Virus record (IMG/VR): IMGVR_UViG_3300026877_000020 | Coordinates: 1 to 6,006 of that record | Length of the DNA: 6,006 nt | Strand: one strand, 5' to 3' | Shown: piece after piece, positions 1 through 6,006 of the stretch | How the letters are laid out: each line of letters begins with the position of its first letter | Numbering within the stretch: the first letter of the stretch is position 1 | Notes under the pieces: generated by a model | Databases searched by the model: none | What the model was told of the DNA's origin: nothing | What the model saw: the letters and a program-made list of their open reading frames with translations, nothing else | Translations under genes and position numbers: made by a program

Positions 1-67
1 TTAACTCATTTACCACATTTTCCAATTCACTTTTTATTTCGTTATAGTCAAATTCGTAGTCTATCAT
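1..67 (-). CDS. Partial hypothetical protein (N-terminus MIDYEFDYNEIKSELENVVNEL..., runs off window)
   Basis: Hand-translated. ATG at 67-65 lies 6 nt after the stop of 74..337 and is preceded by SD-like AAGGTTGA. 22 codons are open to the window edge. Not in the ORF track. Confidence 0.6.
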   Translation of the reverse strand, partial: MIDYEFDYNEIKSELENVVNEL

Positions 68-73
68 TTTCTG

Positions 74-337
74 TCAACCTTTCACAATTTTTGTTATATT
101 GCCAATAGTTATAGATTTTGTATTTCCAAAAGTTGAAAACCATATTTTAAATTTTATCATTTTATTAGCAATTTTAATATATCCAGAAATTGAATTATCA
201 GATTTTGTATATAGTATTAATTCTGCCTTTCTATTGAAGATAAAAGCATTTTCTAGAAGTTTTAATATTTGATTATCATCCATTTCTTCTATTTTTTGTT
301 TAATTTGTTGTTTTTTTACTTCATATATGTCTGACAT
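74..337 (-). CDS. Hypothetical viral protein (87 aa)
   Basis: Non-overlapping ORF co-oriented with its neighbours, with its own TATA+GTCA element at 364-378. Helical-looking N-half and beta-looking C-half; no recognised motif. Confidence 0.8.
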   Translation of the reverse strand: MSDIYEVKKQQIKQKIEEMDDNQILKLLENAFIFNRKAELILYTKSDNSISGYIKIANKMIKFKIWFSTFGNTKSITIGNITKIVKG

Positions 338-363
338 GTTTTCTCAATTAACGTTATGTTACA

Positions 364-378
364 TGACAAATAAAAATA
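364..378 (-). promoter_or_regulatory. Putative archaeal promoter, TATA-like + GTC (TATTTTTATTTGTCA)
   Basis: GTC about 28 nt upstream of the ATG at 337; same pattern as other promoters in the window. Confidence 0.6.
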
Positions 379-389
379 TTTTTATTTTT

Positions 390-1004
390 TCAAAATAAGG
401 AACCGTAACATTTTGCTCTGAATTCACAGGCTTTGCATAGATAATTATTCGCGCCAGGTATAGTTTTGTAATCTTGTGATTTCATAAATTCTTTAAATTT
501 TCTAATCCAGTCAATTGTTTTTTTCATATATTCGTCTAATACTTTTTTATTTATTTGGAATTGCTTAACTTCTTTATTTATTCTATTTAAATATATGATA
601 TAGACATTATCAATTTTATAGTTTTGTTGTTGTAATAAGTAATAGTAAATTGAAACTTGATAAAGATGATATTCCTTTATATTAAAATAGTTACTTGTGA
701 TAGTTTTTAGTTCTATAAGATCGTTATTACAAATTAAGTCAATTCTTCCAGAAATTTTTAATCCTTCAATTTCGCCTTTCACTTCAACTTCACTTTTACA
801 GCCTAATTTTTCAACAAAATAATTTTCTACTCTTTCATGATGTTGTTCTCCTAGATCTAAACTAATTTCATTAATTCCTCTCTCAAATTCAAATTTTCTA
901 CTAAGATAGCTTTTTCTGAAACATATTCCAATTTCACTAGGAAATATTGTATCCTCTGGATATTTCATTTTGAAGCTTTGTTTCACAAATTCTTCATAAT
1001 TCAT
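390..1004 (-). CDS. cas4: Cas4-like RecB/PD-(D/E)xK ssDNA nuclease with Fe-S cluster (SIRV2 gp19/ORF207-like)
   Basis: N-terminal PSEIGIC, GRID...IELKT nuclease motifs, QxxxY (QVSIY) and C-terminal CKAC-x5-C give the four Cas4 Fe-S cysteines. SD-like GGAGAGTGA precedes the ATG, 4 nt after the ATPase stop. Confidence 0.93.
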
Positions 1005-1008
1005 AGTT

Positions 1009-2316
1009 TCACTCTCCTAAATTGAAAAATCTCATTAAGTTTATTATTTTATTGCAAACTTCTTCATTTTGAACTTTTCCAATTTGTAAATCAACATCTA
1101 ATGCTTGCAATAAAATTTGGATATCAATACTTTGTTCTTGTCTTCTAGATTCTAAATTTTCGCAATTTACATAATTATTGATGCTATTTATCTTCTGCTG
1201 AATTAATTCAATTAAAGCTTTTAAAATTGAGGGATATAAAACTTGGGCATTTATAATTTTATCATAAGTTTTTTTAATTGCGATTTGAATAATATGAATT
1301 CTATCTAAAATTGCAGAAGTGAAAATTTCATAATTTTGTAAATAATCTTCAACATCTGGAGCTATTAGTCTATTAATTGTGTAAGCATAAGGATTACCTG
1401 CGTAAATTATTGGAATACATTTTTGAATAGTAGCAGATTTTGACTCTGTTCCAGCACCTCTTGTCCAAATACAATTTTCTATGCCAGTGCTTAGAGTTGA
1501 ATTTATAGTATTTAATTCTTTTGCTGAAAATCCATTTTTCCAAGTTTGAATTTCATCAAATATTAAGCCATTACTCAAGAATACAGCTCCATACATATTG
1601 TTTCGGGCATCATAGACTAAATTGGCATAAGTTGGCGGTTCTGTATAATAACGAAAATTGAAAACTTCTTGTAAAATCATAAAAGTTGTAGTTTTTCCAG
1701 TTCCTCTATTTGAAATTTCAATATAATTTATCTGTCTCTTTGTAATTGGTGATTTGAAAAGTGGAAATAGTCTTGGCAAAAATAAAAATATGTCAGTTGT
1801 ATCCATTTTTGTTACATCATATCCAAAGCTTTGAAGTAGAAGAGCATATGTTAGATGTTCTTGATTCGCTAAGTCAAATAATTCTTTTGCAATTTCATAA
1901 TTATTCGGCGGTTCAATTGAATAAATATCATAAATATGCCAGTCATTTATGCCTTTCCTAATTTTAACAAACATATAAGAAGTTATTAGGTTATAGAAAT
2001 CTTCAGGATTATCAGCTATAAGATGTGGGTCAAATTCACCAGTAAATCCATTTTGAAATTTCGCTATTACTGAACCATCTTTTACTTTAAAACTTGTAAT
2101 TTTTGAAATAAACTTAACTTCATCATTAAATAATAAATAGCTTTGAAAATATTGTTGATCAATTCCGCGTTTATAAGCTTTTAAAATCTCAATTTTTTTT
2201 CTTTCTTCAATCTGTTTTCCAGAGAGAATTATATTTAAAACTCTTTCTGTATCACGGGGATTGTAAAAAAAAGAATGAGACTTGACTTTATCCAAAAACT
2301 GAAAATCACTACTCAT
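1009..2316 (-). CDS. AAA+ ATPase, BrxL/Lon-like ATPase domain; rudiviral ssDNA-annealing ATPase (SIRV2 gp18/ORF436-like)
   Basis: Walker A variant SNRGTGKTT, Walker B LIFDE, sensor-1 IIYAGN, Arg finger SAILDRIH. Size (435 aa) and position between SSB and Cas4 match the recalled SIRV2 gp17-18-19 operon. Confidence 0.88.
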
Positions 2317-2324
2317 AAAAAAAA
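2317..2324 (-). terminator. T8 tract, possible terminator of the SSB transcript
   Basis: Eight T on the minus strand 17 nt after the SSB stop and directly abutting the ATPase ATG; Sulfolobales terminate at oligo-T. Confidence 0.4.
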
Positions 2325-2331
2325 TCGTAAC

Positions 2332-2347
2332 TTATGACATTTTAAAA
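2332..2347 (-). promoter_or_regulatory. Putative internal promoter TTTTAAAATGTCATAA for the ATPase
   Basis: TATA box overlaps the SSB stop codon; GTC about 20 nt upstream of the ATG at 2316. Confidence 0.55.
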
Positions 2348-2743
2348 TTCGTCTTCAACATTCTTTTTCTGTGCTTTTTTCTGTGTTTTTTGTTCTTTCT
2401 TTTCTTGTTCTTCTTCACTTAATTCCAATTCCTCAACTTGTGTAGTATTATTACCTCTAGGCGTAAACTTTACATATTCATTTAAAATGTCAGCATATTT
2501 ATTTAAGAATTCTGCAATTAATCTTAAATCTTCTGCATCATTAGCAGTTATTCCTAATTGTTTTCTAAAGTTATTTTGGCTATGAATGGTCATAGAATAT
2601 CTTACTTTGCCATCTTGTGGAACTGCATTTAGTTGTACTACTAGTCTTTTTAATCCTTTTATCTTTAAAATTCTGCTAACTATTTTATTCTGTTCTTTTG
2701 CAGTTTTACCTAATTCATCTATTATTTCCTTCAGGCTTGCCAT
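2342..2743 (-). CDS. Rudiviral single-stranded DNA-binding protein (SIRV2 gp17/ORF131-like)
   Basis: 133 aa, first gene of the SSB-ATPase-Cas4 module. Folded N-domain plus low-complexity charged C-tail ending in acidic-aromatic EDEF. Confidence 0.82.
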   Translation of the reverse strand: MASLKEIIDELGKTAKEQNKIVSRILKIKGLKRLVVQLNAVPQDGKVRYSMTIHSQNNFRKQLGITANDAEDLRLIAEFLNKYADILNEYVKFTPRGNNTTQVEELELSEEEQEKKEQKTQKKAQKKNVEDEF

Positions 2744-2770
2744 CTTGTTTCCCGAATTAAAAGTTTGAAA

Positions 2771-2790
2771 TATGACAAATTTAAATATTT
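2771..2790 (-). promoter_or_regulatory. Putative promoter AAATATTTAAATTTGTCATA for the SSB operon
   Basis: A-rich BRE-like stretch, TTTAAA TATA box and GTCA about 31 nt upstream of the ATG at 2743. Confidence 0.7.
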
Positions 2791-2820
2791 AAGAATTTAA
2801 TAGCTTAATATATTCTCCAT

Positions 2821-2842
2821 GAGAAAAAAGAAATAAAAAAAG
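2821..2842 (-). terminator. Oligo-T terminator after the 90-aa gene
   Basis: Minus strand reads CTTTTTTTATTTCTTTTTTCTC immediately after the stop at 2845. Confidence 0.6.
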
Positions 2843-2844
2843 AT

Positions 2845-3117
2845 TTAAATTAACTTGAAGAATATGGATCTTATGATTTTTGAGATTTTGAGATTATATT
2901 TTTTAGCTAATTCTTCAAGTTTTTGATAGTACAATTCATCAATTGTGAAGAAAACACGTTCATCATAGTTATCTGTACTTTCTATTGGCTTAAATTGTTT
3001 TTCTCCATTTAGTATTTTGTCAATTTCTTGTTTTATTAAGTCTCTTTTTTGATAAAAAACATTTTTATATTTACTTGGTATGCGAATTTCTATATATTTG
3101 TTCTTCTGTCGCTTCAT
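2845..3117 (-). CDS. Putative DNA-binding protein with RHH-like domain(s) (90 aa)
   Basis: C-half RVFFTIDELYYQKLEELAKKYNLKISKIIRSIF fits the ribbon-helix-helix pattern. N-half KYIEIRIPSKYK resembles a second RHH strand-helix. Basic protein. Confidence 0.65.
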   Translation of the reverse strand: MKRQKNKYIEIRIPSKYKNVFYQKRDLIKQEIDKILNGEKQFKPIESTDNYDERVFFTIDELYYQKLEELAKKYNLKISKIIRSIFFKLI

Positions 3118-3149
3118 ATATTTCTTTATTTTTATAAAATATATAAACG

Positions 3150-3171
3150 TGACATATACATTTAAATGTCA
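3150..3171. promoter_or_regulatory. Divergent promoter core with inverted repeat TGACAT-N10-ATGTCA and palindrome ACATTTAAATGT
   Basis: Seen directly between the divergent starts at 3117 (-) and 3189 (+). TTTAAATGTCA lies about 19 nt before the Rep GTG. Confidence 0.6.
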
Positions 3172-3188
3172 GATTTTCATTTTGAAAT

Positions 3189-3533
3189 GTGATCTGTGAA
3201 AAAGTTTTCATTTATCATTTTCTTTACAATTATACATATTTTGTTACTATCGCTACAAATTATCGCTATAATGATACGACAAAAATTTATAAAAAATTTC
3301 GGCAATATATCTATAATCATGATAAAAATTCTCATGTATTTAGCGTAAAAGAATATACAACAAGATTACATGGACTTCATTACCATGTTTTAGTTTTCAC
3401 GAATAAAAAACTTGACTATTCCAGAGTTCATAAACGAATGCCAAAACATTCGGATATTAGAATTCAATTAGTTCCGAAAACAAAAAAAGATATAAAAAAA
3501 GTTTTAACTTATATGTTAAAAAATCAAAAATAA
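3189..3533 (+). CDS. rep: HUH endonuclease / rudiviral replication initiator Rep (SIRV ORF119-like)
   Basis: Motif I-like YFVTIAT, HUH motif GLHYHVLV and catalytic Tyr in TYMLK. Closely resembles recalled SIRV Rep. GTG start; an in-frame TGA at 3183-3185 prevents upstream extension. Confidence 0.92.
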   Translation: MICEKVFIYHFLYNYTYFVTIATNYRYNDTTKIYKKFRQYIYNHDKNSHVFSVKEYTTRLHGLHYHVLVFTNKKLDYSRVHKRMPKHSDIRIQLVPKTKKDIKKVLTYMLKNQK

Positions 3534-3534
3534 A

Positions 3535-3834
3535 TTATTTACTTTGTGACTGTTGTTGAGAGTTTGAATTTTGTTCAGCTTTTTTCTGTGCTAATGCATT
3601 TACATCTCTTAATGTATCCATATTCAATAATGAATTAACTCCAAGAGTTGTAGTGTCCTTTATTGATTCTATTGCTGTAATTGTTGATTTTGTCATTTGA
3701 TCAATTGCTATTTGGAATGATTCATTTGTTTGTTTTTGATTATAAAGATGTATAATTTCGCCAACAACATATGAGCCTATTAGAACTCCTATTAATGCTA
3801 AAAATCCTTCTAAAGCTGTTTGGCTTAGTGTCAT
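3535..3834 (-). CDS. PVAP, virus-associated pyramid egress protein (SIRV2 P98 / STIV C92 family)
   Basis: N-terminal TM helix followed by GEIIHLYN..AIDQMTKSTITAIESIKDTT..LLNMDTLRDVN.LA, closely matching recalled SIRV2 P98; 99 aa. Confidence 0.93.
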   Translation of the reverse strand: MTLSQTALEGFLALIGVLIGSYVVGEIIHLYNQKQTNESFQIAIDQMTKSTITAIESIKDTTTLGVNSLLNMDTLRDVNALAQKKAEQNSNSQQQSQSK

Positions 3835-3886
3835 TTCAATTCTGTTATTTACAAATTACTTAATAATAAAGTTTGTGCAAAAATTC

Positions 3887-3908
3887 GAAATATATAAATA
3901 TGTCATAA
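3887..3908 (+). promoter_or_regulatory. Putative promoter GAAATATATAAATATGTCATAA for the svtR-RHH operon
   Basis: BRE/TATA + GTCA about 29 nt before the ATG at 3933. Perfect palindrome GTTTATAAAC at 3914-3923 and SD-like GAGG downstream. Confidence 0.7.
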
Positions 3909-3932
3909 TGTATGTTTATAAACTGAGGAAAA

Positions 3933-4094
3933 ATGGAGAAAGAAGTAAAAAAGGAAAGAATTACGTTTGGAATTCATATAGATAAAGAGCTAAAGAGAAG
4001 GCTAAAAATCTATTGCGTGAACAACAATATCACTATGACTGAAGCTATAGAGGAAGCGTTAGAGGAATATTTACAAAAGAGGCAATCAAAATGA
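3933..4094 (+). CDS. svtR: SvtR-like ribbon-helix-helix transcriptional regulator (53 aa; SIRV1 ORF56b-like)
   Basis: Hand-translated: MEKEVKKERITFGIHIDKELKRRLKIYCVNNNITMTEAIEEALEEYLQKRQSK. The FGI..DK.LK.RLK.YC..NN...AIEEA..EYLQKR pattern matches recalled SvtR. Absent from the ORF track. Confidence 0.9.
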   Translation: MEKEVKKERITFGIHIDKELKRRLKIYCVNNNITMTEAIEEALEEYLQKRQSK

Positions 4095-4267
4095 GAGTAA
4101 TAAGTATAAAAATTCCAGAAAAACTCCTTGATGAACTCGATAATTATGCTATGAATCATAGATTTCATAGATCTGAAGTTGTCAGATTAGCGATTATAGA
4201 ATTTTTAGATAATCATGTCAGAAATAAAGAAAATGATGAAGTTAAAATTGAAAAAATTACGTTTTAA
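4091..4267 (+). CDS. CopG/NikR-type RHH transcriptional regulator (58 aa)
   Basis: Hand-translated: MRVISIKIPEKLLDELDNYAMNHRFHRSEVVRLAIIEFLDNHVRNKENDEVKIEKITF. Canonical RHH pattern (ISIKIP...RSEVVR.AI) and ATGA overlap with svtR. Absent from the ORF track. Confidence 0.88.
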   Translation: MRVISIKIPEKLLDELDNYAMNHRFHRSEVVRLAIIEFLDNHVRNKENDEVKIEKITF

Positions 4268-4306
4268 TAAAAAAAGTTATCTTAAGTTATTAATTTTTTT
4301 TCTTTT
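4266..4306. terminator. Bidirectional oligo-T terminator region between convergent RHH and dcd genes
   Basis: Plus strand TTTTTTTTCTTTT at about 4294-4306; minus strand CTTTTTTTATT at about 4266-4276. Confidence 0.55.
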
Positions 4307-4847
4307 AACTTTTATAGTTACTATTTTTAAATATTTCAAATCTTGGCAAAGTTACACCTCTTTGATATTGATATTTTCCATGATATGGTTTCTCTACTGG
4401 AGATAATGTTTTAGCGAAAATTAAATGTAGAAATCTTTCTCCAGTTGCTAATCTTACTGGAAATTCTGAGCCAATAATTTCTATTGTTAATTGACCCTTA
4501 AATCCGGCATCTATAATTGTTGGAGGTATAGAAATTCCAAGTCTAGCATATGTAGAACGTAGATTCACAAAAGCCATAATATCGTTTGGAAGTTCTATAT
4601 ATTCAAGGGTTTCCATTAATAAATGTTCATGAGGTTGTATTACAATTTCGTAAGAATCTACAATTTCGTAAAAATCTTCTATATTATCATCTGGCTCGAA
4701 TACTTTATCTGTTTTTTTCAATCTAGCAAAATGATTTCCAATTCTTAAATCTACGCCATTTTCTCTTACTATTTCTTCCGAATATGGCACTATTTTTATC
4801 CATTCTTTTTCTAGATAGTATTTTAAATCACGATCACTTAAGATCAT
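4305..4847 (-). CDS. dcd: dCTP deaminase / dUTPase (trimeric Dcd-Dut family)
   Basis: MILSDRDL start, [30 protein letters not shown] and PYHGKYQ.Q.GVT motifs. Catalytic-type Ser/Arg/Asp/Glu residues are present. Confidence 0.93.
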
Positions 4848-4871
4848 GTTTTATCGAGTTTGAAAAATAAG

Positions 4872-4890
4872 ATATGACGAATATATTTCT
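4872..4890 (-). promoter_or_regulatory. Putative promoter AGAAATATATTCGTCATAT for dcd
   Basis: TATA-like + GTCA about 29 nt upstream of the ATG at 4847. Confidence 0.6.
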
Positions 4891-4911
4891 TATTATTTTT
4901 TATTTTCTAGT

Positions 4912-5130
4912 TTAGGAATCAATATTTGGAGGTTCATCTTCAAAAATTTCTATATATTCATCATCCATAGTTCCTAATGGGTCAAAATATTCAATTCTAT
5001 ACCATTTTCCGTTACATTTTATATAACAACACCAATCTGTACAAAAATAACTATTTTCATCACAATTTTCTAAAATTGATTTCAAAATATGTTGTTCATT
5101 TTTAGAATTTGAATTATCATAATTTTCCAT
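4912..5130 (-). CDS. Small acidic Cys-rich hypothetical protein (72 aa from internal Met; 86 aa if started at 5172)
   Basis: ORF track gives 4912..5172, but a TATA+GTCA element at 5148-5166 points to the ATG at 5130 (MENYDNS...). Confidence 0.7.
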   Translation of the reverse strand: MENYDNSNSKNEQHILKSILENCDENSYFCTDWCCYIKCNGKWYRIEYFDPLGTMDDEYIEIFEDEPPNIDS

Positions 5131-5147
5131 GATTTTTACTTTTAACT

Positions 5148-5166
5148 TTATGACAAATATATTTTT
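5148..5166 (-). promoter_or_regulatory. Putative promoter AAAAATATATTTGTCATAA
   Basis: Matches the window consensus; GTC about 22 nt upstream of the ATG at 5130. Confidence 0.6.
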
Positions 5167-5168
5167 AT

Positions 5169-5411
5169 TCATTTCTTCTTTTTTAATCTTTCAATTTCAG
5201 CTTTAAGTTCATCAATTTCATCATAAATATCTGCAAAAATGTCATAAATTTCTACATACATAAATGCAAAAATTCCAGATGCAAAAATTACTGATATTAT
5301 AATTTCTAATATATTTTTTGTTAGAATTCCTAATGACAAAATTACTAAAGCTAAAAATATAAAAGCTAGAAAAATTAAAAAAACTATTATTAAACGGCAT
5401 TCTTTATCCAT
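5169..5411 (-). CDS. Hypothetical membrane protein, 2 predicted TM helices + C-terminal coiled coil (80 aa)
   Basis: Hydrophobic stretches LIIVFLIFLAFIFLALVILSLGIL and IIISVIFASGIFAFMYV; heptad-like IYDEIDELKAEIERLKKKK. Confidence 0.75.
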   Translation of the reverse strand: MDKECRLIIVFLIFLAFIFLALVILSLGILTKNILEIIISVIFASGIFAFMYVEIYDIFADIYDEIDELKAEIERLKKKK

Positions 5412-5423
5412 TTTTTCTCATTT

Positions 5424-5741
5424 TTATTTTTCGTTTTCTGACAAATATATACTTTTGCTAACTTCTCCGCAAAAAACTGTAATATTAAACATATTATGAT
5501 TGTATCGCCAATTTATTTTAATATATTGTGGATATTTGAAAGTTTTAATTATATATCTCAAAATTCCAATTCCTTTTTTCTCATATCTTTCTTTTGTAAT
5601 ATTCATTCTAATTTTTATAGTTATCAATTTTTCATCTTCCAAAACTAAATAATCGTAAACGTTATCAAAGTAACGCATTTTTAACCACTCGAATAATTGA
5701 AGAGTATATTTTTTACATTCTAATTTGACAAAGTCATCCAT
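5424..5741 (-). CDS. Hypothetical viral protein (105 aa)
   Basis: Co-oriented ORF with upstream TATA+GTC element; basic and aromatic-rich; no recognised motif. Confidence 0.75.
   Translation of the reverse strand: MDDFVKLECKKYTLQLFEWLKMRYFDNVYDYLVLEDEKLITIKIRMNITKERYEKKGIGILRYIIKTFKYPQYIKINWRYNHNMFNITVFCGEVSKSIYLSENEK
5438..5456 (-). promoter_or_regulatory. Putative promoter AAAAGTATATATTTGTCAG embedded in the 3' end of the 105-aa gene
   Basis: TATA+GTCA about 29 nt upstream of the ATG at 5411. Confidence 0.55.
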
Positions 5742-5759
5742 ATTTCAACTTTCATAATT

Positions 5760-5779
5760 CGACAATTAAATAATTTTTT
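5760..5779 (-). promoter_or_regulatory. Putative promoter AAAAAATTATTTAATTGTCG for the 105-aa gene
   Basis: TTTAAT + GTC about 20 nt upstream of the ATG at 5741; a second AAAATGTCA lies just upstream. Confidence 0.5.
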
Positions 5780-5946
5780 GACATTTTACGTATAGTATAA
5801 TATATAGCATGCAATTCTCATAATTATCTCAATTTTTTAATTCATAATATCATCAGCTCATATACAAAATATTATGTATATAGTTTTTGTCTTGAATTTT
5901 ACGCCAATTATAACAATTATTATTCATCATATTACATATACGACGT

Positions 5947-5963
5947 GAAAATTTATATTGTAG
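5947..5963 (+). promoter_or_regulatory. Putative MCP promoter GAAAATTTATATTGTAG
   Basis: BRE-like GAAAA + TTTATA about 33-38 nt upstream of the ATG at 5990. Confidence 0.55.
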
Positions 5964-5989
5964 AAATTAAAATTTTTAATTGACCAAAA

Positions 5990-6006
5990 ATGGCGAAAGG
6001 AAGAAC
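5990..6006 (+). CDS. Start of probable rudivirus major capsid protein (MAKGR(T)...), truncated by the window edge
   Basis: ATG GCG AAA GGA AGA AC matches the recalled rudiviral MCP N-terminus MAKG(H/R)T. Position a few genes from the dUTPase agrees with recalled SIRV synteny. Only 5 full codons are visible. Confidence 0.7.

What the first reader, a model, noticed from the sequence alone, without database searches (positions are those of the whole stretch)
3535..4267. Candidate lysis-timing switch: PVAP egress gene head-to-head with an svtR + RHH operon missed by the ORF track
Seen: PVAP (-) and svtR (+) share a 98-bp divergent intergenic region containing the palindrome GTTTATAAAC. svtR is coupled by ATGA to a second RHH gene. 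Known: SvtR represses its own promoter and a structural-gene promoter in SIRV1, and PVAP alone forms pyramids that open the cell envelope. As I recall, SIRV2 P98 lies far from svtR. Inference: here the RHH pair, possibly as a heterodimer, binds the shared region and holds pyramid formation off until late infection.
Basis: partly seen in the sequence, partly recalled or inferred. Interest (0 to 1): 0.7.

Follow-up and report, generated by a model that had tools for sequence, protein, structure and literature searches.

The report
Pyramid egress gene beside svtR operon
The gene calls are correct, but this back-to-back layout of the pyramid egress gene and a two-regulator operon is the standard, already-sequenced layout of Yellowstone Sulfolobus rod-shaped viruses, and nothing here shows that it acts as a lysis timer.

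Summary
The window is a 6-kb metagenomic contig of a Usarudivirus-like rudivirus. It is 80-85% identical in DNA to SIRV4-11, V3, V60 and V65.

**Observation: confirmed.**
- PVAP lies at 3535-3834(-) and svtR at 3933-4094(+).
- A second RHH gene at 4091-4267(+) is joined to svtR by an ATGA overlap.
- The divergent spacer is 98 bp, and GTTTATAAAC lies at 3914-3923.

**Interpretation: largely unsupported.**
- The layout is annotated in every published usarudivirus and recurs in about 40 IMG/VR contigs.
- The spacer resolves into two abutting core promoters. One is a PVAP TATA box that also precedes PVAP in SIRV1/2/3. The other is the svtR BRE/TATA/GTC block that also heads svtR in SIRV1/2.
- The palindrome is no more than chance (P about 0.28) and lies in the least conserved 15 bp. 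That segment is positionally homologous to the only exact match in SIRV1 to the published SvtR operator consensus (shortened by one spacer base), so svtR autoregulation is the likelier role.
- The second RHH is the ortholog of SIRV2 gp21 and SIRV9 gp19. These are viral aCcr1, a homodimeric host cell-cycle regulator, so a heterodimer with SvtR is not favoured.
- Natural variants carry 1.1-1.5 kb between PVAP and svtR, and others have svtR without the second RHH.

The finding is ordinary, and the hypothesis remains testable.

The parts
3535..3834 (-). PVAP gene (pyramid-forming egress protein, 99 aa, with an N-terminal hydrophobic helix)
   Evidence: ORF. phrog_8367 E=4.4e-52. tblastn identity of 86% to SIRV7, 67% to SIRV2 P98 and 58% to STIV1 C92. 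Alignment A2.
3861..3874 (-). Predicted PVAP core promoter. The TATA box reads AAACTTTATTATTA on the - strand, with an invariant TTATTA core at 3864-3869. The inferred transcription start is near 3840, giving a leader of about 6 nt. There is no GTC element.
   Evidence: Columns 3864-3869 are 100% conserved in 32 unique spacers. The same core (AAACTATATTATTTAG) precedes PVAP in SIRV1/2/3. The TSS position is inferred from the usual archaeal TATA-to-start distance.
3878..3909 (+). svtR core promoter: A-rich/BRE-like stretch, TATA box (3890-3899) and the TGTCATAAT element (GTC at 3902-3904)
   Evidence: Positions 3882-3909 show 95.5% mean column conservation across 32 unique spacers. TGTCATAAT sits at a fixed offset of 69 from the PVAP start codon in all 38 compact loci. 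The same ATATAAA-ATGTCATAAT core heads svtR in SIRV1/2. TATA plus GTCA recurs upstream of at least 9 other genes in the window.
3910..3924 (+). Variable 15-nt segment around the inferred svtR transcription start and 5' UTR.
   Evidence: It is the least conserved part of the spacer (70%), apart from TTT at 3915-3917. At least 12 sequence versions are seen. It is positionally homologous to SIRV1 5576-5596, the only zero-mismatch match to the 4-N form of the published SvtR consensus. The window sequence itself does not match that consensus.
3925..3928 (+). Shine-Dalgarno-like GAGG, 4 nt upstream of the svtR ATG
   Evidence: Read directly from the sequence. Positions 3925-3935 are 93% conserved.
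3933..4094 (+). svtR (RHH transcription repressor of the 56B family, 53 aa)
   Evidence: PF21432 at 53.2 bits. PDB 2KEL at E=6e-17. 62-65% identity to SIRV1/2 ORF56b.
4091..4267 (+). Second RHH gene, the ortholog of SIRV2 gp21 (ORF59b) and SIRV9 gp19, i.e. viral aCcr1 (cell-cycle regulator). It is translationally coupled to svtR by ATGA at 4091-4094.
   Evidence: BLASTP shows 43% identity to gp21 (E=6e-17) and 64% to SIRV9 gp19 (E=3e-18). It is the only gp21-like place found in each usarudivirus genome. The aCcr1 paper places SIRV9 gp19 in the SiL_0190 branch. Cellular homologs occur in Sulfolobaceae and other Thermoproteota.
3189..3533 (+). Homolog of SIRV2 ORF119c (Pfam '117-like'; weaker hit to the REP_ORF2-G2P replication-protein family), convergent with PVAP and 1 nt from its stop codon. 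In SIRV1/2 this gene lies directly upstream of svtR.
   Evidence: PF21578 at E=7e-48 and PF23343 at E=6e-8. SIRV2 layout ORF119c then ORF56b. In SIRV2 the svtR promoter overlaps the 3' end of ORF119c.

Best explanation
This is the ordinary usarudivirus arrangement. A self-contained PVAP cassette (own TATA box plus gene) sits between the ORF119c homolog and svtR.

The 98-bp spacer is two compact archaeal core promoters placed back to back, with no room left over.
- PVAP promoter: TATA near 3861-3874 on the - strand, with a near-leaderless mRNA.
- svtR promoter: BRE/TATA/GTC at 3878-3909, a short 5' UTR with a GAGG ribosome-binding site, then svtR and the aCcr1 homolog as a two-gene, translationally coupled operon.

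SvtR most likely represses its own operon by binding around 3905-3925. That stretch spans the predicted transcription start and contains the palindrome, and it mirrors the SIRV1 gp08 promoter. The second RHH protein is a viral aCcr1. It acts as a homodimer on host cell-division and replication promoters, and possibly on its own promoter. PVAP is driven by its own non-GTC promoter, independently of its neighbour.

Shown here: the gene identities, the synteny, the conservation pattern and the promoter homology. Inferred: the transcription starts, SvtR binding at 3905-3925 and the independence of PVAP expression.
For: - Gene identities.
- The layout is annotated in SIRV4-11 and present in about 40 IMG/VR contigs.
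- The window equals the SIRV2 gene order with the block ORF56b..ORF84a inverted and PVAP and P90 inserted.
- The svtR promoter core is shared with SIRV1/2. The PVAP TATA core is shared with SIRV1/2/3.
- The conservation profile shows only these two cores plus SD/ATG under strong constraint.
- In insertion variants the breakpoint falls right after the svtR-type BRE/TATA, which is duplicated. PVAP then faces a different gene.
- The SIRV1 consensus operator maps to the homologous position of svtR's own 5' UTR.
- aCcr1 biology, with SIRV9 gp19 used as a clade member: PMC9976892.
- PVAP and the capsid gene lack the GTC element that at least 9 other promoters in the window carry.
Against: - No transcript or binding data exist for any usarudivirus.
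- The window's 3905-3925 differs from the SIRV1 consensus at 5 of 15 specified positions. No consensus hit lies in the spacer.
- SIRV2's own svtR promoter does not keep the SIRV1 consensus either.
- The consensus only fits SIRV1 if its spacer is shortened by one base.
- SvtR is reported to act from about 80 bp away, apparently by spreading along the DNA. So 45-55 bp to the PVAP TATA is within reach, and independence of PVAP is not proven.
- The indel-free 98-bp spacing in 38 loci could reflect coupling rather than mere crowding.
Confidence: 0.68

Rival explanations
1. SvtR, alone or with the second RHH, binds the shared spacer and represses the PVAP promoter, delaying pyramid formation until late infection.
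For: - SvtR represses its own promoter and the gp30 promoter in SIRV1. It is thought to polymerise along DNA from a site about 80 nt away (review PMC5569661).
- AvtR of AFV6 protects about 100 nt between two neighbouring promoters.
- A candidate SvtR site lies in the spacer at 3905-3925.
- Spacer length is invariant across 38 compact loci.
Against: - The PVAP side conserves nothing but its TATA core.
- The same PVAP promoter core works in SIRV1/2/3 far from svtR.
- Variants with 1.1-1.5 kb inserted between svtR and PVAP exist, one on a 40.7-kb contig.
- No SvtR consensus hit at 2 mismatches or fewer lies near SIRV1 PVAP.
- In SIRV2, PVAP mRNA rises steadily and the timed step is pyramid opening.
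- The palindrome is at chance level and poorly conserved.
- The heterodimer idea is disfavoured. SvtR is a homodimer and aCcr1-clade proteins are predicted homodimers that act alone. The two proteins share no RHH-domain similarity by BLASTP. About 11 loci have svtR with no detectable second RHH downstream; in L028 and L030 only about 55 bp separate svtR from dut.
Confidence: 0.12
2. The aCcr1 homolog, not SvtR, is the regulator that matters at this spacer. It feeds back on the svtR-aCcr1 promoter and perhaps touches the PVAP promoter, linking the host cell-division shutdown with egress.
For: - SIRV2 gp21 binds the promoter of its own gp20-gp21 operon and that of gp17.
- In all seven STIV-like loci, PVAP is followed co-directionally by a gp21-like RHH. 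This is A61, 59% identical to gp21.
- So PVAP lies within 1-2 genes of an aCcr1 homolog in two unrelated virus families.
Against: - No AGTATTA box lies in the spacer. There are three in the whole window against 1.9 expected.
- In SIRV1/2/3 and SSRV1, PVAP and the gp21 homolog are 10-20 kb apart.
- Many usarudivirus-like contigs lack the gene next to svtR.
- aCcr1 homologs occur in 87 viral genomes, so chance adjacency in small genomes is not rare.
Confidence: 0.1
3. No repressor is needed. The two TATA boxes are about 27-28 bp apart centre to centre, so the two pre-initiation complexes compete or interfere sterically. That would make PVAP and svtR-aCcr1 expression partly exclusive.
For: - The TATA cores at 3861-3870 and 3890-3899 face apart with only about 17-19 bp between them.
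- The spacing is strictly indel-free.
- Insertion variants keep a copy of the same BRE/TATA back to back with PVAP.
Against: - This is pure inference from geometry.
- The neighbouring P90/ORF119c-homolog pair has a similarly tight 71-bp spacer in many loci, so tight divergent promoters look like general genome compaction.
- SIRV1/2/3 PVAP has no such partner.
Confidence: 0.1

Closest known systems
Usarudivirus SIRV4-SIRV11 and isolates V3, V60, V65 (for example SIRV9 ORF17/18/19 and SIRV8 ORF19/20/21)
   Same: They share the gene order ORF119c homolog(+), PVAP(-), svtR(+), gp21-like RHH(+) with an ATGA overlap. They share the 98-bp (annotated as 98-101 bp) spacer with the same promoter cores. 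DNA identity over window 54-4217 is 80-85%.
   Different: The window's SvtR has a beta-strand variant (RITFGIH rather than RVVFGIN). Its RHH2 keeps a long C-terminal tail like SIRV2 gp21. To the right it continues directly into dUTPase and then the capsid gene, as in SIRV7 and SIRV1/2 but unlike SIRV8/9.
SIRV1/SIRV2 svtR (gp08, ORF56b) autoregulated promoter
   Same: It has the same TATA-ATGTCATAAT core and the same 33-nt distance from TATA to ATG. The consensus SvtR site lies between the GTC element and the SD, where the window has its variable segment and palindrome.
   Different: In SIRV1/2 the promoter overlaps the 3' end of ORF119c and there is no divergent neighbour. PVAP is more than 20 kb away, and gp21 is coupled to ORF84a rather than to svtR. 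The operator sequence itself is not conserved.
SIRV2 gp21 / SiL_0190 (aCcr1) cell-cycle regulators
   Same: Both are single RHH domains of about 58 aa. The window protein is 43% identical to gp21 and 64% to SIRV9 gp19, which the authors place in the aCcr1 branch. Cellular homologs occur in Sulfolobales.
   Different: The operon partner is svtR rather than ORF84a. DNA specificity and the cell-enlargement phenotype have not been tested for this protein.
AvtR (AFV6 gp29) and the gp29/gp30 intergenic region
   Same: An RHH regulator binds the region between its own promoter and that of a neighbouring gene, itself an RHH gene, and oligomerises over about 100 nt.
   Different: AvtR is a tandem-RHH monomer from a lipothrixvirus and its target is not an egress gene. 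No binding data exist for the usarudivirus spacer.
STIV1 C92-A61 neighbourhood
   Same: PVAP lies next to a gp21/aCcr1-like RHH gene.
   Different: The genes are co-directional (PVAP then RHH), 66-280 bp apart, and there is no svtR. The virus family (Turriviridae) is unrelated.

Membership tests
PVAP (SIRV2 P98 / STIV1 C92) | Sequence homology to P98/C92 over the full length | tested here: met
   phrog_8367 at E=4.4e-52 over residues 1-95. 67% identity to P98 and 58% to C92. 25 invariant columns in alignment A2.
PVAP (SIRV2 P98 / STIV1 C92) | Protein of about 10 kDa with one N-terminal hydrophobic transmembrane helix and a helical C-terminal part | tested here: met
   99 aa with a hydrophobic stretch at about residues 7-28, read from the translation. 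No dedicated TM predictor was run.
PVAP (SIRV2 P98 / STIV1 C92) | Self-assembles into sevenfold pyramids in membranes | not testable with these tools
   Needs expression and electron microscopy.
SvtR (56B-like RHH repressor) | Matches the 56B RHH family and the solved SvtR structure | tested here: met
   PF21432 at 53.2 bits against a cut-off of 27.2. PDB 2KEL at E=6e-17.
SvtR (56B-like RHH repressor) | Own promoter carries the SvtR operator consensus reported for SIRV1 | tested here: not met
   No hit at 3 mismatches or fewer in the spacer; 11 hits in the window against 11.0 expected. The positionally homologous 21-mer at 3905-3925 has 5 mismatches in 15 specified positions, from a manual comparison with the site found.
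SvtR (56B-like RHH repressor) | Binds and represses its own promoter and a structural-gene promoter | not testable with these tools
   Needs EMSA, footprinting or in vitro transcription. A scan of SIRV9 for the window-type 15-mer found no copy upstream of the ORF1070 homolog.
aCcr1 (SiL_0190 / SIRV2 gp21 clade) | Orthology to gp21 and to clade members used in the defining paper | tested here: met
   43% identity to gp21 (E=6e-17). 64% to SIRV9 gp19 (E=3e-18), which the paper lists in the SiL_0190 branch. Only one gp21-like place per usarudivirus genome.
aCcr1 (SiL_0190 / SIRV2 gp21 clade) | Cellular homologs in Sulfolobales | tested here: met
   38 genome loci, including Sulfolobaceae, Metallosphaera, Stygiolobus and Desulfurococcales. 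No tree was built to place them relative to the SIL_RS14755 branch.
aCcr1 (SiL_0190 / SIRV2 gp21 clade) | Binds AGTATTA boxes and blocks cell division when expressed | not testable with these tools
   No AGTATTA lies in the spacer. The phenotype needs expression in S. islandicus.
Repressor-controlled divergent promoter switch (AvtR gp29/gp30 type) | Regulator binding site or sites shared by, or spreading over, both divergent promoters | tested here: inconclusive
   Only one candidate site exists, on the svtR side. Nothing but the TATA core is conserved on the PVAP side. Insertion variants separate the two promoters.

The most novel reading that the evidence does not exclude
In usarudiviruses the relocation of PVAP next to svtR-aCcr1 created a real regulatory hub. 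SvtR (or the aCcr1 homolog), bound at the svtR transcription start, spreads about 50 bp over the PVAP TATA box. Pyramid-protein synthesis is then tied to the level of the regulators that also shut down host cell division. The independent PVAP-aCcr1 adjacency in turriviruses would reflect the same functional coupling.
Probability: 0.1. Interest if true: 0.55.

Novelty: new member of a known kind. Interest (0 to 1): 0.25.

Why it matters
How archaeal viruses time pyramid-mediated lysis is still open. Reviews say that PVAP accumulates steadily and that the opening trigger is unknown.

If the spacer did couple PVAP to SvtR or aCcr1, it would be the first transcriptional lysis control described for an archaeal virus. 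As it stands, the value of the locus is more modest.
- It is a clean, rigidly spaced pair of back-to-back archaeal promoters.
- Natural variants exist (operator versions, insertions, loss of the second RHH) that could serve as a ready-made test set.
- It adds one more usarudivirus contig to a well-sampled group.

Tried and rejected
- **Published SvtR consensus in the window.** At 3 mismatches or fewer there were 11 hits against 11.0 expected, none in the spacer. As printed it does not hit SIRV1's own promoter either; it does only when one spacer base is removed.
- **aCcr1 box AGTATTA.** None in the spacer.
- **Palindrome enrichment.** Not significant.
- **Co-variation of the SvtR beta-strand with the variable segment.** The segment tracks SvtR (Mantel rho 0.45, p=0.002) and not PVAP (rho 0.08). 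This is what physical linkage predicts. Two different beta-strand types share the same segment, so the result is inconclusive.
- **Genome-wide scan of SIRV9 for the window-type 15-mer.** No copy upstream of the tail-fibre gene. The 2-mismatch hits are at chance level.
- **Word-indexed protein search with RHH2.** Returned only 8 near-identical metagenome proteins.
- **Papers not held.** The original SvtR paper and both SIRV2 transcriptome papers are not in the library. Their content is taken from reviews.
- **SvtR/RHH2 heterodimer prediction.** Not run, because the structure tool takes single chains only.
- **Sigma-70 promoter scan.** Not used, because it does not apply to archaeal promoters.
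Full report
**1. What the window is**

The window is identical to IMG/VR contig IMGVR_UViG_3300026877_000020, which is 6006 bp long (locus L015, 100%). Over positions 54-4217 it is 80-85% identical in DNA to the Yellowstone Sulfolobus islandicus rod-shaped viruses SIRV4-11 and to isolates V3, V60 and V65, all of genus Usarudivirus. It is more distantly related to SIRV1/2/3. GC content is 25%.

Gene content comes:

| Coordinates | Gene |
|---|---|
| 390-1004(-) | Cas4-like nuclease |
| 1009-2316(-) | ATPase |
| 2342-2743(-) | homolog of SIRV2 ORF131b, labelled ssDNA-binding protein in SIRV3 (Pfam PHA01746-like) |
| 2845-3117(-) | P90 with a C-terminal RHH (the 'SIRV4gp10' RHH cluster of PMC9976892) |
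| 3189-3533(+) | homolog of SIRV2 ORF119c |
| 3535-3834(-) | PVAP |
| 3933-4094(+) | svtR |
| 4091-4267(+) | second RHH |
| 4305-4847(-) | dCTP-deaminase/dUTPase-like gene |
| 4912-5741(-) | three small genes |
| from 5990 | start of a capsid-like ORF |

**2. The observation**

- PVAP matches phrog_8367 'pyramid forming protein' at E=4.4e-52. It is 67% identical to SIRV2 P98 and 58% to STIV1 C92.
- svtR matches Pfam 56B_RHH above the gathering score and the solved SvtR structure 2KEL at E=6e-17.
- The second RHH overlaps svtR by ATGA at 4091-4094.
- The spacer 3835-3932 is 98 bp, and GTTTATAAAC is at 3914-3923.
- The recollection that SIRV2 P98 lies far from svtR is right. ORF56b lies at 8.8 kb and ORF98 at 31.7 kb. 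The same holds in SIRV1.

The palindrome itself is not remarkable. The window holds 12 perfect 10-bp palindromes against 15.8 +/- 4.2 expected. A 98-bp sequence of the spacer's composition contains at least one with probability 0.28.

**3. The arrangement is the known usarudivirus layout**

SIRV8 ORF19/20/21, SIRV9 ORF17/18/19, and SIRV4, 7, 10 and 11 are annotated with exactly this order and the same ATGA coupling. The sparsely annotated V3, V60 and V65 encode the same genes.

A scan of IMG/VR with a PVAP alignment returned 53 loci. About 40 of them are usarudivirus-like and show the ORF119c homolog, then PVAP, then a divergent svtR.

Compared with SIRV2, the window has the same genes with three differences: the block ORF56b..ORF84a is inverted, P90 and PVAP are inserted, and ORF91 is missing. 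In SIRV2, ORF119c is followed directly by ORF56b, and ORF59b is ATGA-coupled to ORF84a and followed by the dUTPase gene. Bautista et al. (PMC5454432) already noted that part of the core genes are syntenic among Yellowstone SIRVs but rearranged relative to the Icelandic ones. They did not discuss regulation.

**4. Anatomy of the 98-bp spacer**

I aligned 9 genomes and then 32 unique spacers. Both gave a clear footprint:

| Region | Feature | Mean column conservation |
|---|---|---|
| 3864-3869 | TAATAA, invariant; on the - strand part of AAACTTTATTATTA, about 26 nt from the conserved AATT at 3838-3841 and 30 nt from the PVAP ATG | 100% |
| 3882-3909 | svtR BRE/TATA/GTC, ending in TGTCATAAT | 95.5% |
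| 3910-3924 | variable segment holding the palindrome | 70%, the lowest; only TTT at 3915-3917 is conserved |
| 3925-3935 | GAGG and ATG | 93% |

I read 3864-3869 as the PVAP TATA box, with a near-leaderless transcript. A near-identical core (AAACTATATTATTTAG) precedes PVAP in SIRV1/2/3. I read 3882-3909 as the svtR promoter, because SIRV1 and SIRV2 have the same ATATAAA-ATGTCATAAT core at the same 33-nt distance from the svtR ATG. There it overlaps the end of ORF119c.

A TATA box followed by GTCA recurs upstream of at least nine other genes in the window. It is absent from the PVAP and capsid-gene promoters. From my own recollection of the SIRV transcription literature (Kessler et al. 2004, not checked here), GTC after the TATA box is a rudivirus-specific promoter element.

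The spacer is therefore two promoters, each inherited with its gene and abutting at about 3875-3880. The transcription starts (about 3840 for PVAP and about 3918-3921 for svtR) are inferred from TATA distances and have not been measured.

**5. The palindrome and the SvtR operator**

The review PMC5569661 gives a putative SvtR consensus, ATnnTTCAAnAnnnnnAAAATG. It also states that SvtR represses its own (gp08) promoter and the gp30 promoter, the latter apparently by spreading from a site about 80 nt away.
- In the window this consensus has no hit in the spacer at 3 mismatches or fewer. The 11 hits elsewhere equal the chance expectation.
- As printed, it does not hit SIRV1's svtR promoter either.
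- With one fewer N it has a single zero-mismatch match in the whole SIRV1 genome, at 5576-5596(-). That lies between the GTC element and the SD of svtR.
- The positionally homologous stretch of the window is 3905-3925, which contains the palindrome.

So the palindrome sits where an SvtR auto-operator would be expected, but the sequence is not conserved. It has 5 mismatches in 15 specified positions. At least 12 versions of the 15-nt segment occur among relatives. The exact palindrome is in only 6 of 38 compact loci, plus V60.

The segment co-varies with SvtR (Mantel rho 0.45, p=0.002) and not with PVAP (rho 0.08). That is what linkage alone predicts. SvtR variants with different beta-strands (RITFGIH and RVVFGIN) share the same segment, so the test is inconclusive. 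A scan of SIRV9 found no second copy of the motif upstream of the ORF1070 homolog.

**6. The second RHH is a viral aCcr1**

- It is 43% identical to SIRV2 gp21/ORF59b (E=6e-17).
- It is 64% identical over the RHH domain to SIRV9 gp19.
- It is the only gp21-like place in each usarudivirus genome.

[quoted passage not shown] It also shows that gp21 binds the viral gp17 and gp20-gp21 promoters, and that clade members are predicted homodimers. The authors used SIRV9 gp19 and STIV A61 as members of the clade.

Cellular homologs of the window protein occur in Sulfolobaceae and other Thermoproteota. No AGTATTA lies in the spacer. SvtR and this protein show no similarity across the RHH domain by BLASTP, and SvtR is a homodimer. 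A heterodimer is therefore not favoured. I could not test it, because the structure tool folds single chains only.

**7. Natural variants that bear on the 'switch'**

- In L033, L036/L039/L043 and L038, two membrane-protein genes lie between PVAP and svtR. In L036 they are 264 and 188 aa, with no Pfam match.
- The breakpoint in these variants is immediately after the svtR-type BRE/TATA, which is duplicated. One copy stays back to back with PVAP and heads the inserted genes. The other heads svtR, together with the segment that holds the candidate operator. L036 comes from a 40.7-kb contig, which is genome-sized.
- About 11 loci have svtR with no detectable second RHH downstream. In L028 and L030 only about 55 bp separate svtR from dut.
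- SIRV4 combines a SIRV8-type PVAP half with a SIRV7-type svtR half of the spacer.

These variants show that the two halves are separable modules. Neither the adjacency nor the RHH pair is obligatory in this lineage.

**8. What argues for coupling**

The spacer is strikingly rigid. TGTCATAAT sits at offset 69 from the PVAP start codon in all 38 compact loci, although SvtR identity falls to 53%. SvtR and AvtR are reported to cover 80-100 nt by oligomerisation, so 45-55 bp to the PVAP TATA is within reach.

The rigidity is not unique, however. The neighbouring P90/ORF119c-homolog pair has a 71-bp spacer in the window and, by tblastn coordinates, in many loci.

For SIRV2, a review states that PVAP transcripts rise steadily through infection. 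It also states that the unexplained, rapid step is pyramid opening, which needs an archaeal factor (PMC4456609; PMC10791045). A search of the held literature found no paper that links SvtR to PVAP.

**9. Verdict**

The gene calls and the synteny contrast are correct. The arrangement is known from published genomes. The spacer is best explained as two independent, abutting core promoters, with probable SvtR autoregulation at the svtR start. The second RHH is a host-directed cell-cycle regulator.

The lysis-timing switch is not excluded, but no evidence found here favours it and several observations argue against it being necessary. Novelty is low: this is a new member of a known kind. The hypothesis can be tested cheaply with EMSA, footprinting and in vitro transcription, and the natural variants provide ready controls.

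Noticed in passing
L059-L065 (STIV-like loci), e.g. L065:3001-3279 and L065:3548-3733: In all seven turrivirus loci, PVAP (C92) is followed co-directionally, 66-280 bp downstream, by a gp21/aCcr1-like RHH gene. In STIV1 this is A61, 59% identical to SIRV2 gp21. PVAP therefore lies within 1-2 genes of an aCcr1 homolog in two unrelated virus families, although not in SIRV1/2/3 or SSRV1.
   Followed up: partly
L036:1616-2979 (also L033, L038, L039, L043): Two membrane-protein genes (264 aa and 188 aa, no Pfam match) are inserted between PVAP and svtR. The breakpoint is right after the svtR-type BRE/TATA, which is duplicated. This suggests that cassettes are shuffled by recombination at conserved promoter cores.
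   Followed up: partly
window 3118-3188: P90 (RHH, -) and the ORF119c homolog (+) form a second head-to-head pair with a 71-bp spacer. It holds two TATA+GTC promoters and the palindromes TTTTATAAAA (3130) and CATTTAAATG (3159). With svtR and the aCcr1 homolog, three RHH genes lie within 1.4 kb.
   Followed up: no
window 4238-4264 versus 3942-3968: The C-terminal tail of the second RHH (EVKIEKITF) resembles the N-terminal beta-strand region of SvtR (EVKKERITF). The gp21 tail (KAKVEKIKF) and the STIV A61 tail are similar. The meaning is unknown.
   Followed up: no
window 3531-3537: The ORF119c homolog and PVAP are convergent with 1 nt between their stop codons. The first long T-run after the ORF119c-homolog stop is about 50 nt inside PVAP, so the 3' ends of the two transcripts probably overlap in antisense.
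   Followed up: no
window 3835-3874 and 5920-5989: The PVAP and capsid-gene promoters have GTA where at least nine other promoters in the window have GTC(A) after the TATA box. This may mark a separate promoter class.
   Followed up: partly
window 4217-6006: The right third of the window has no megablast match to any phage record. Its gene order (dUTPase-like gene, three small genes, then a capsid-like ORF starting MAKGRT at 5990) follows SIRV1/2 and SIRV7 rather than SIRV8/9.
   Followed up: no
L001 (SIRV8), L012 (SIRV10), L106 (SIRV9): PVAP TATA region: In SIRV8/9/10-type spacers the PVAP TATA region reads AGTAATA on the + strand, one mismatch from the aCcr1 box AGTATTA. The window has AATAATA, two mismatches. 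A 7-mer near-match in AT-rich DNA is expected by chance.
   Followed up: no
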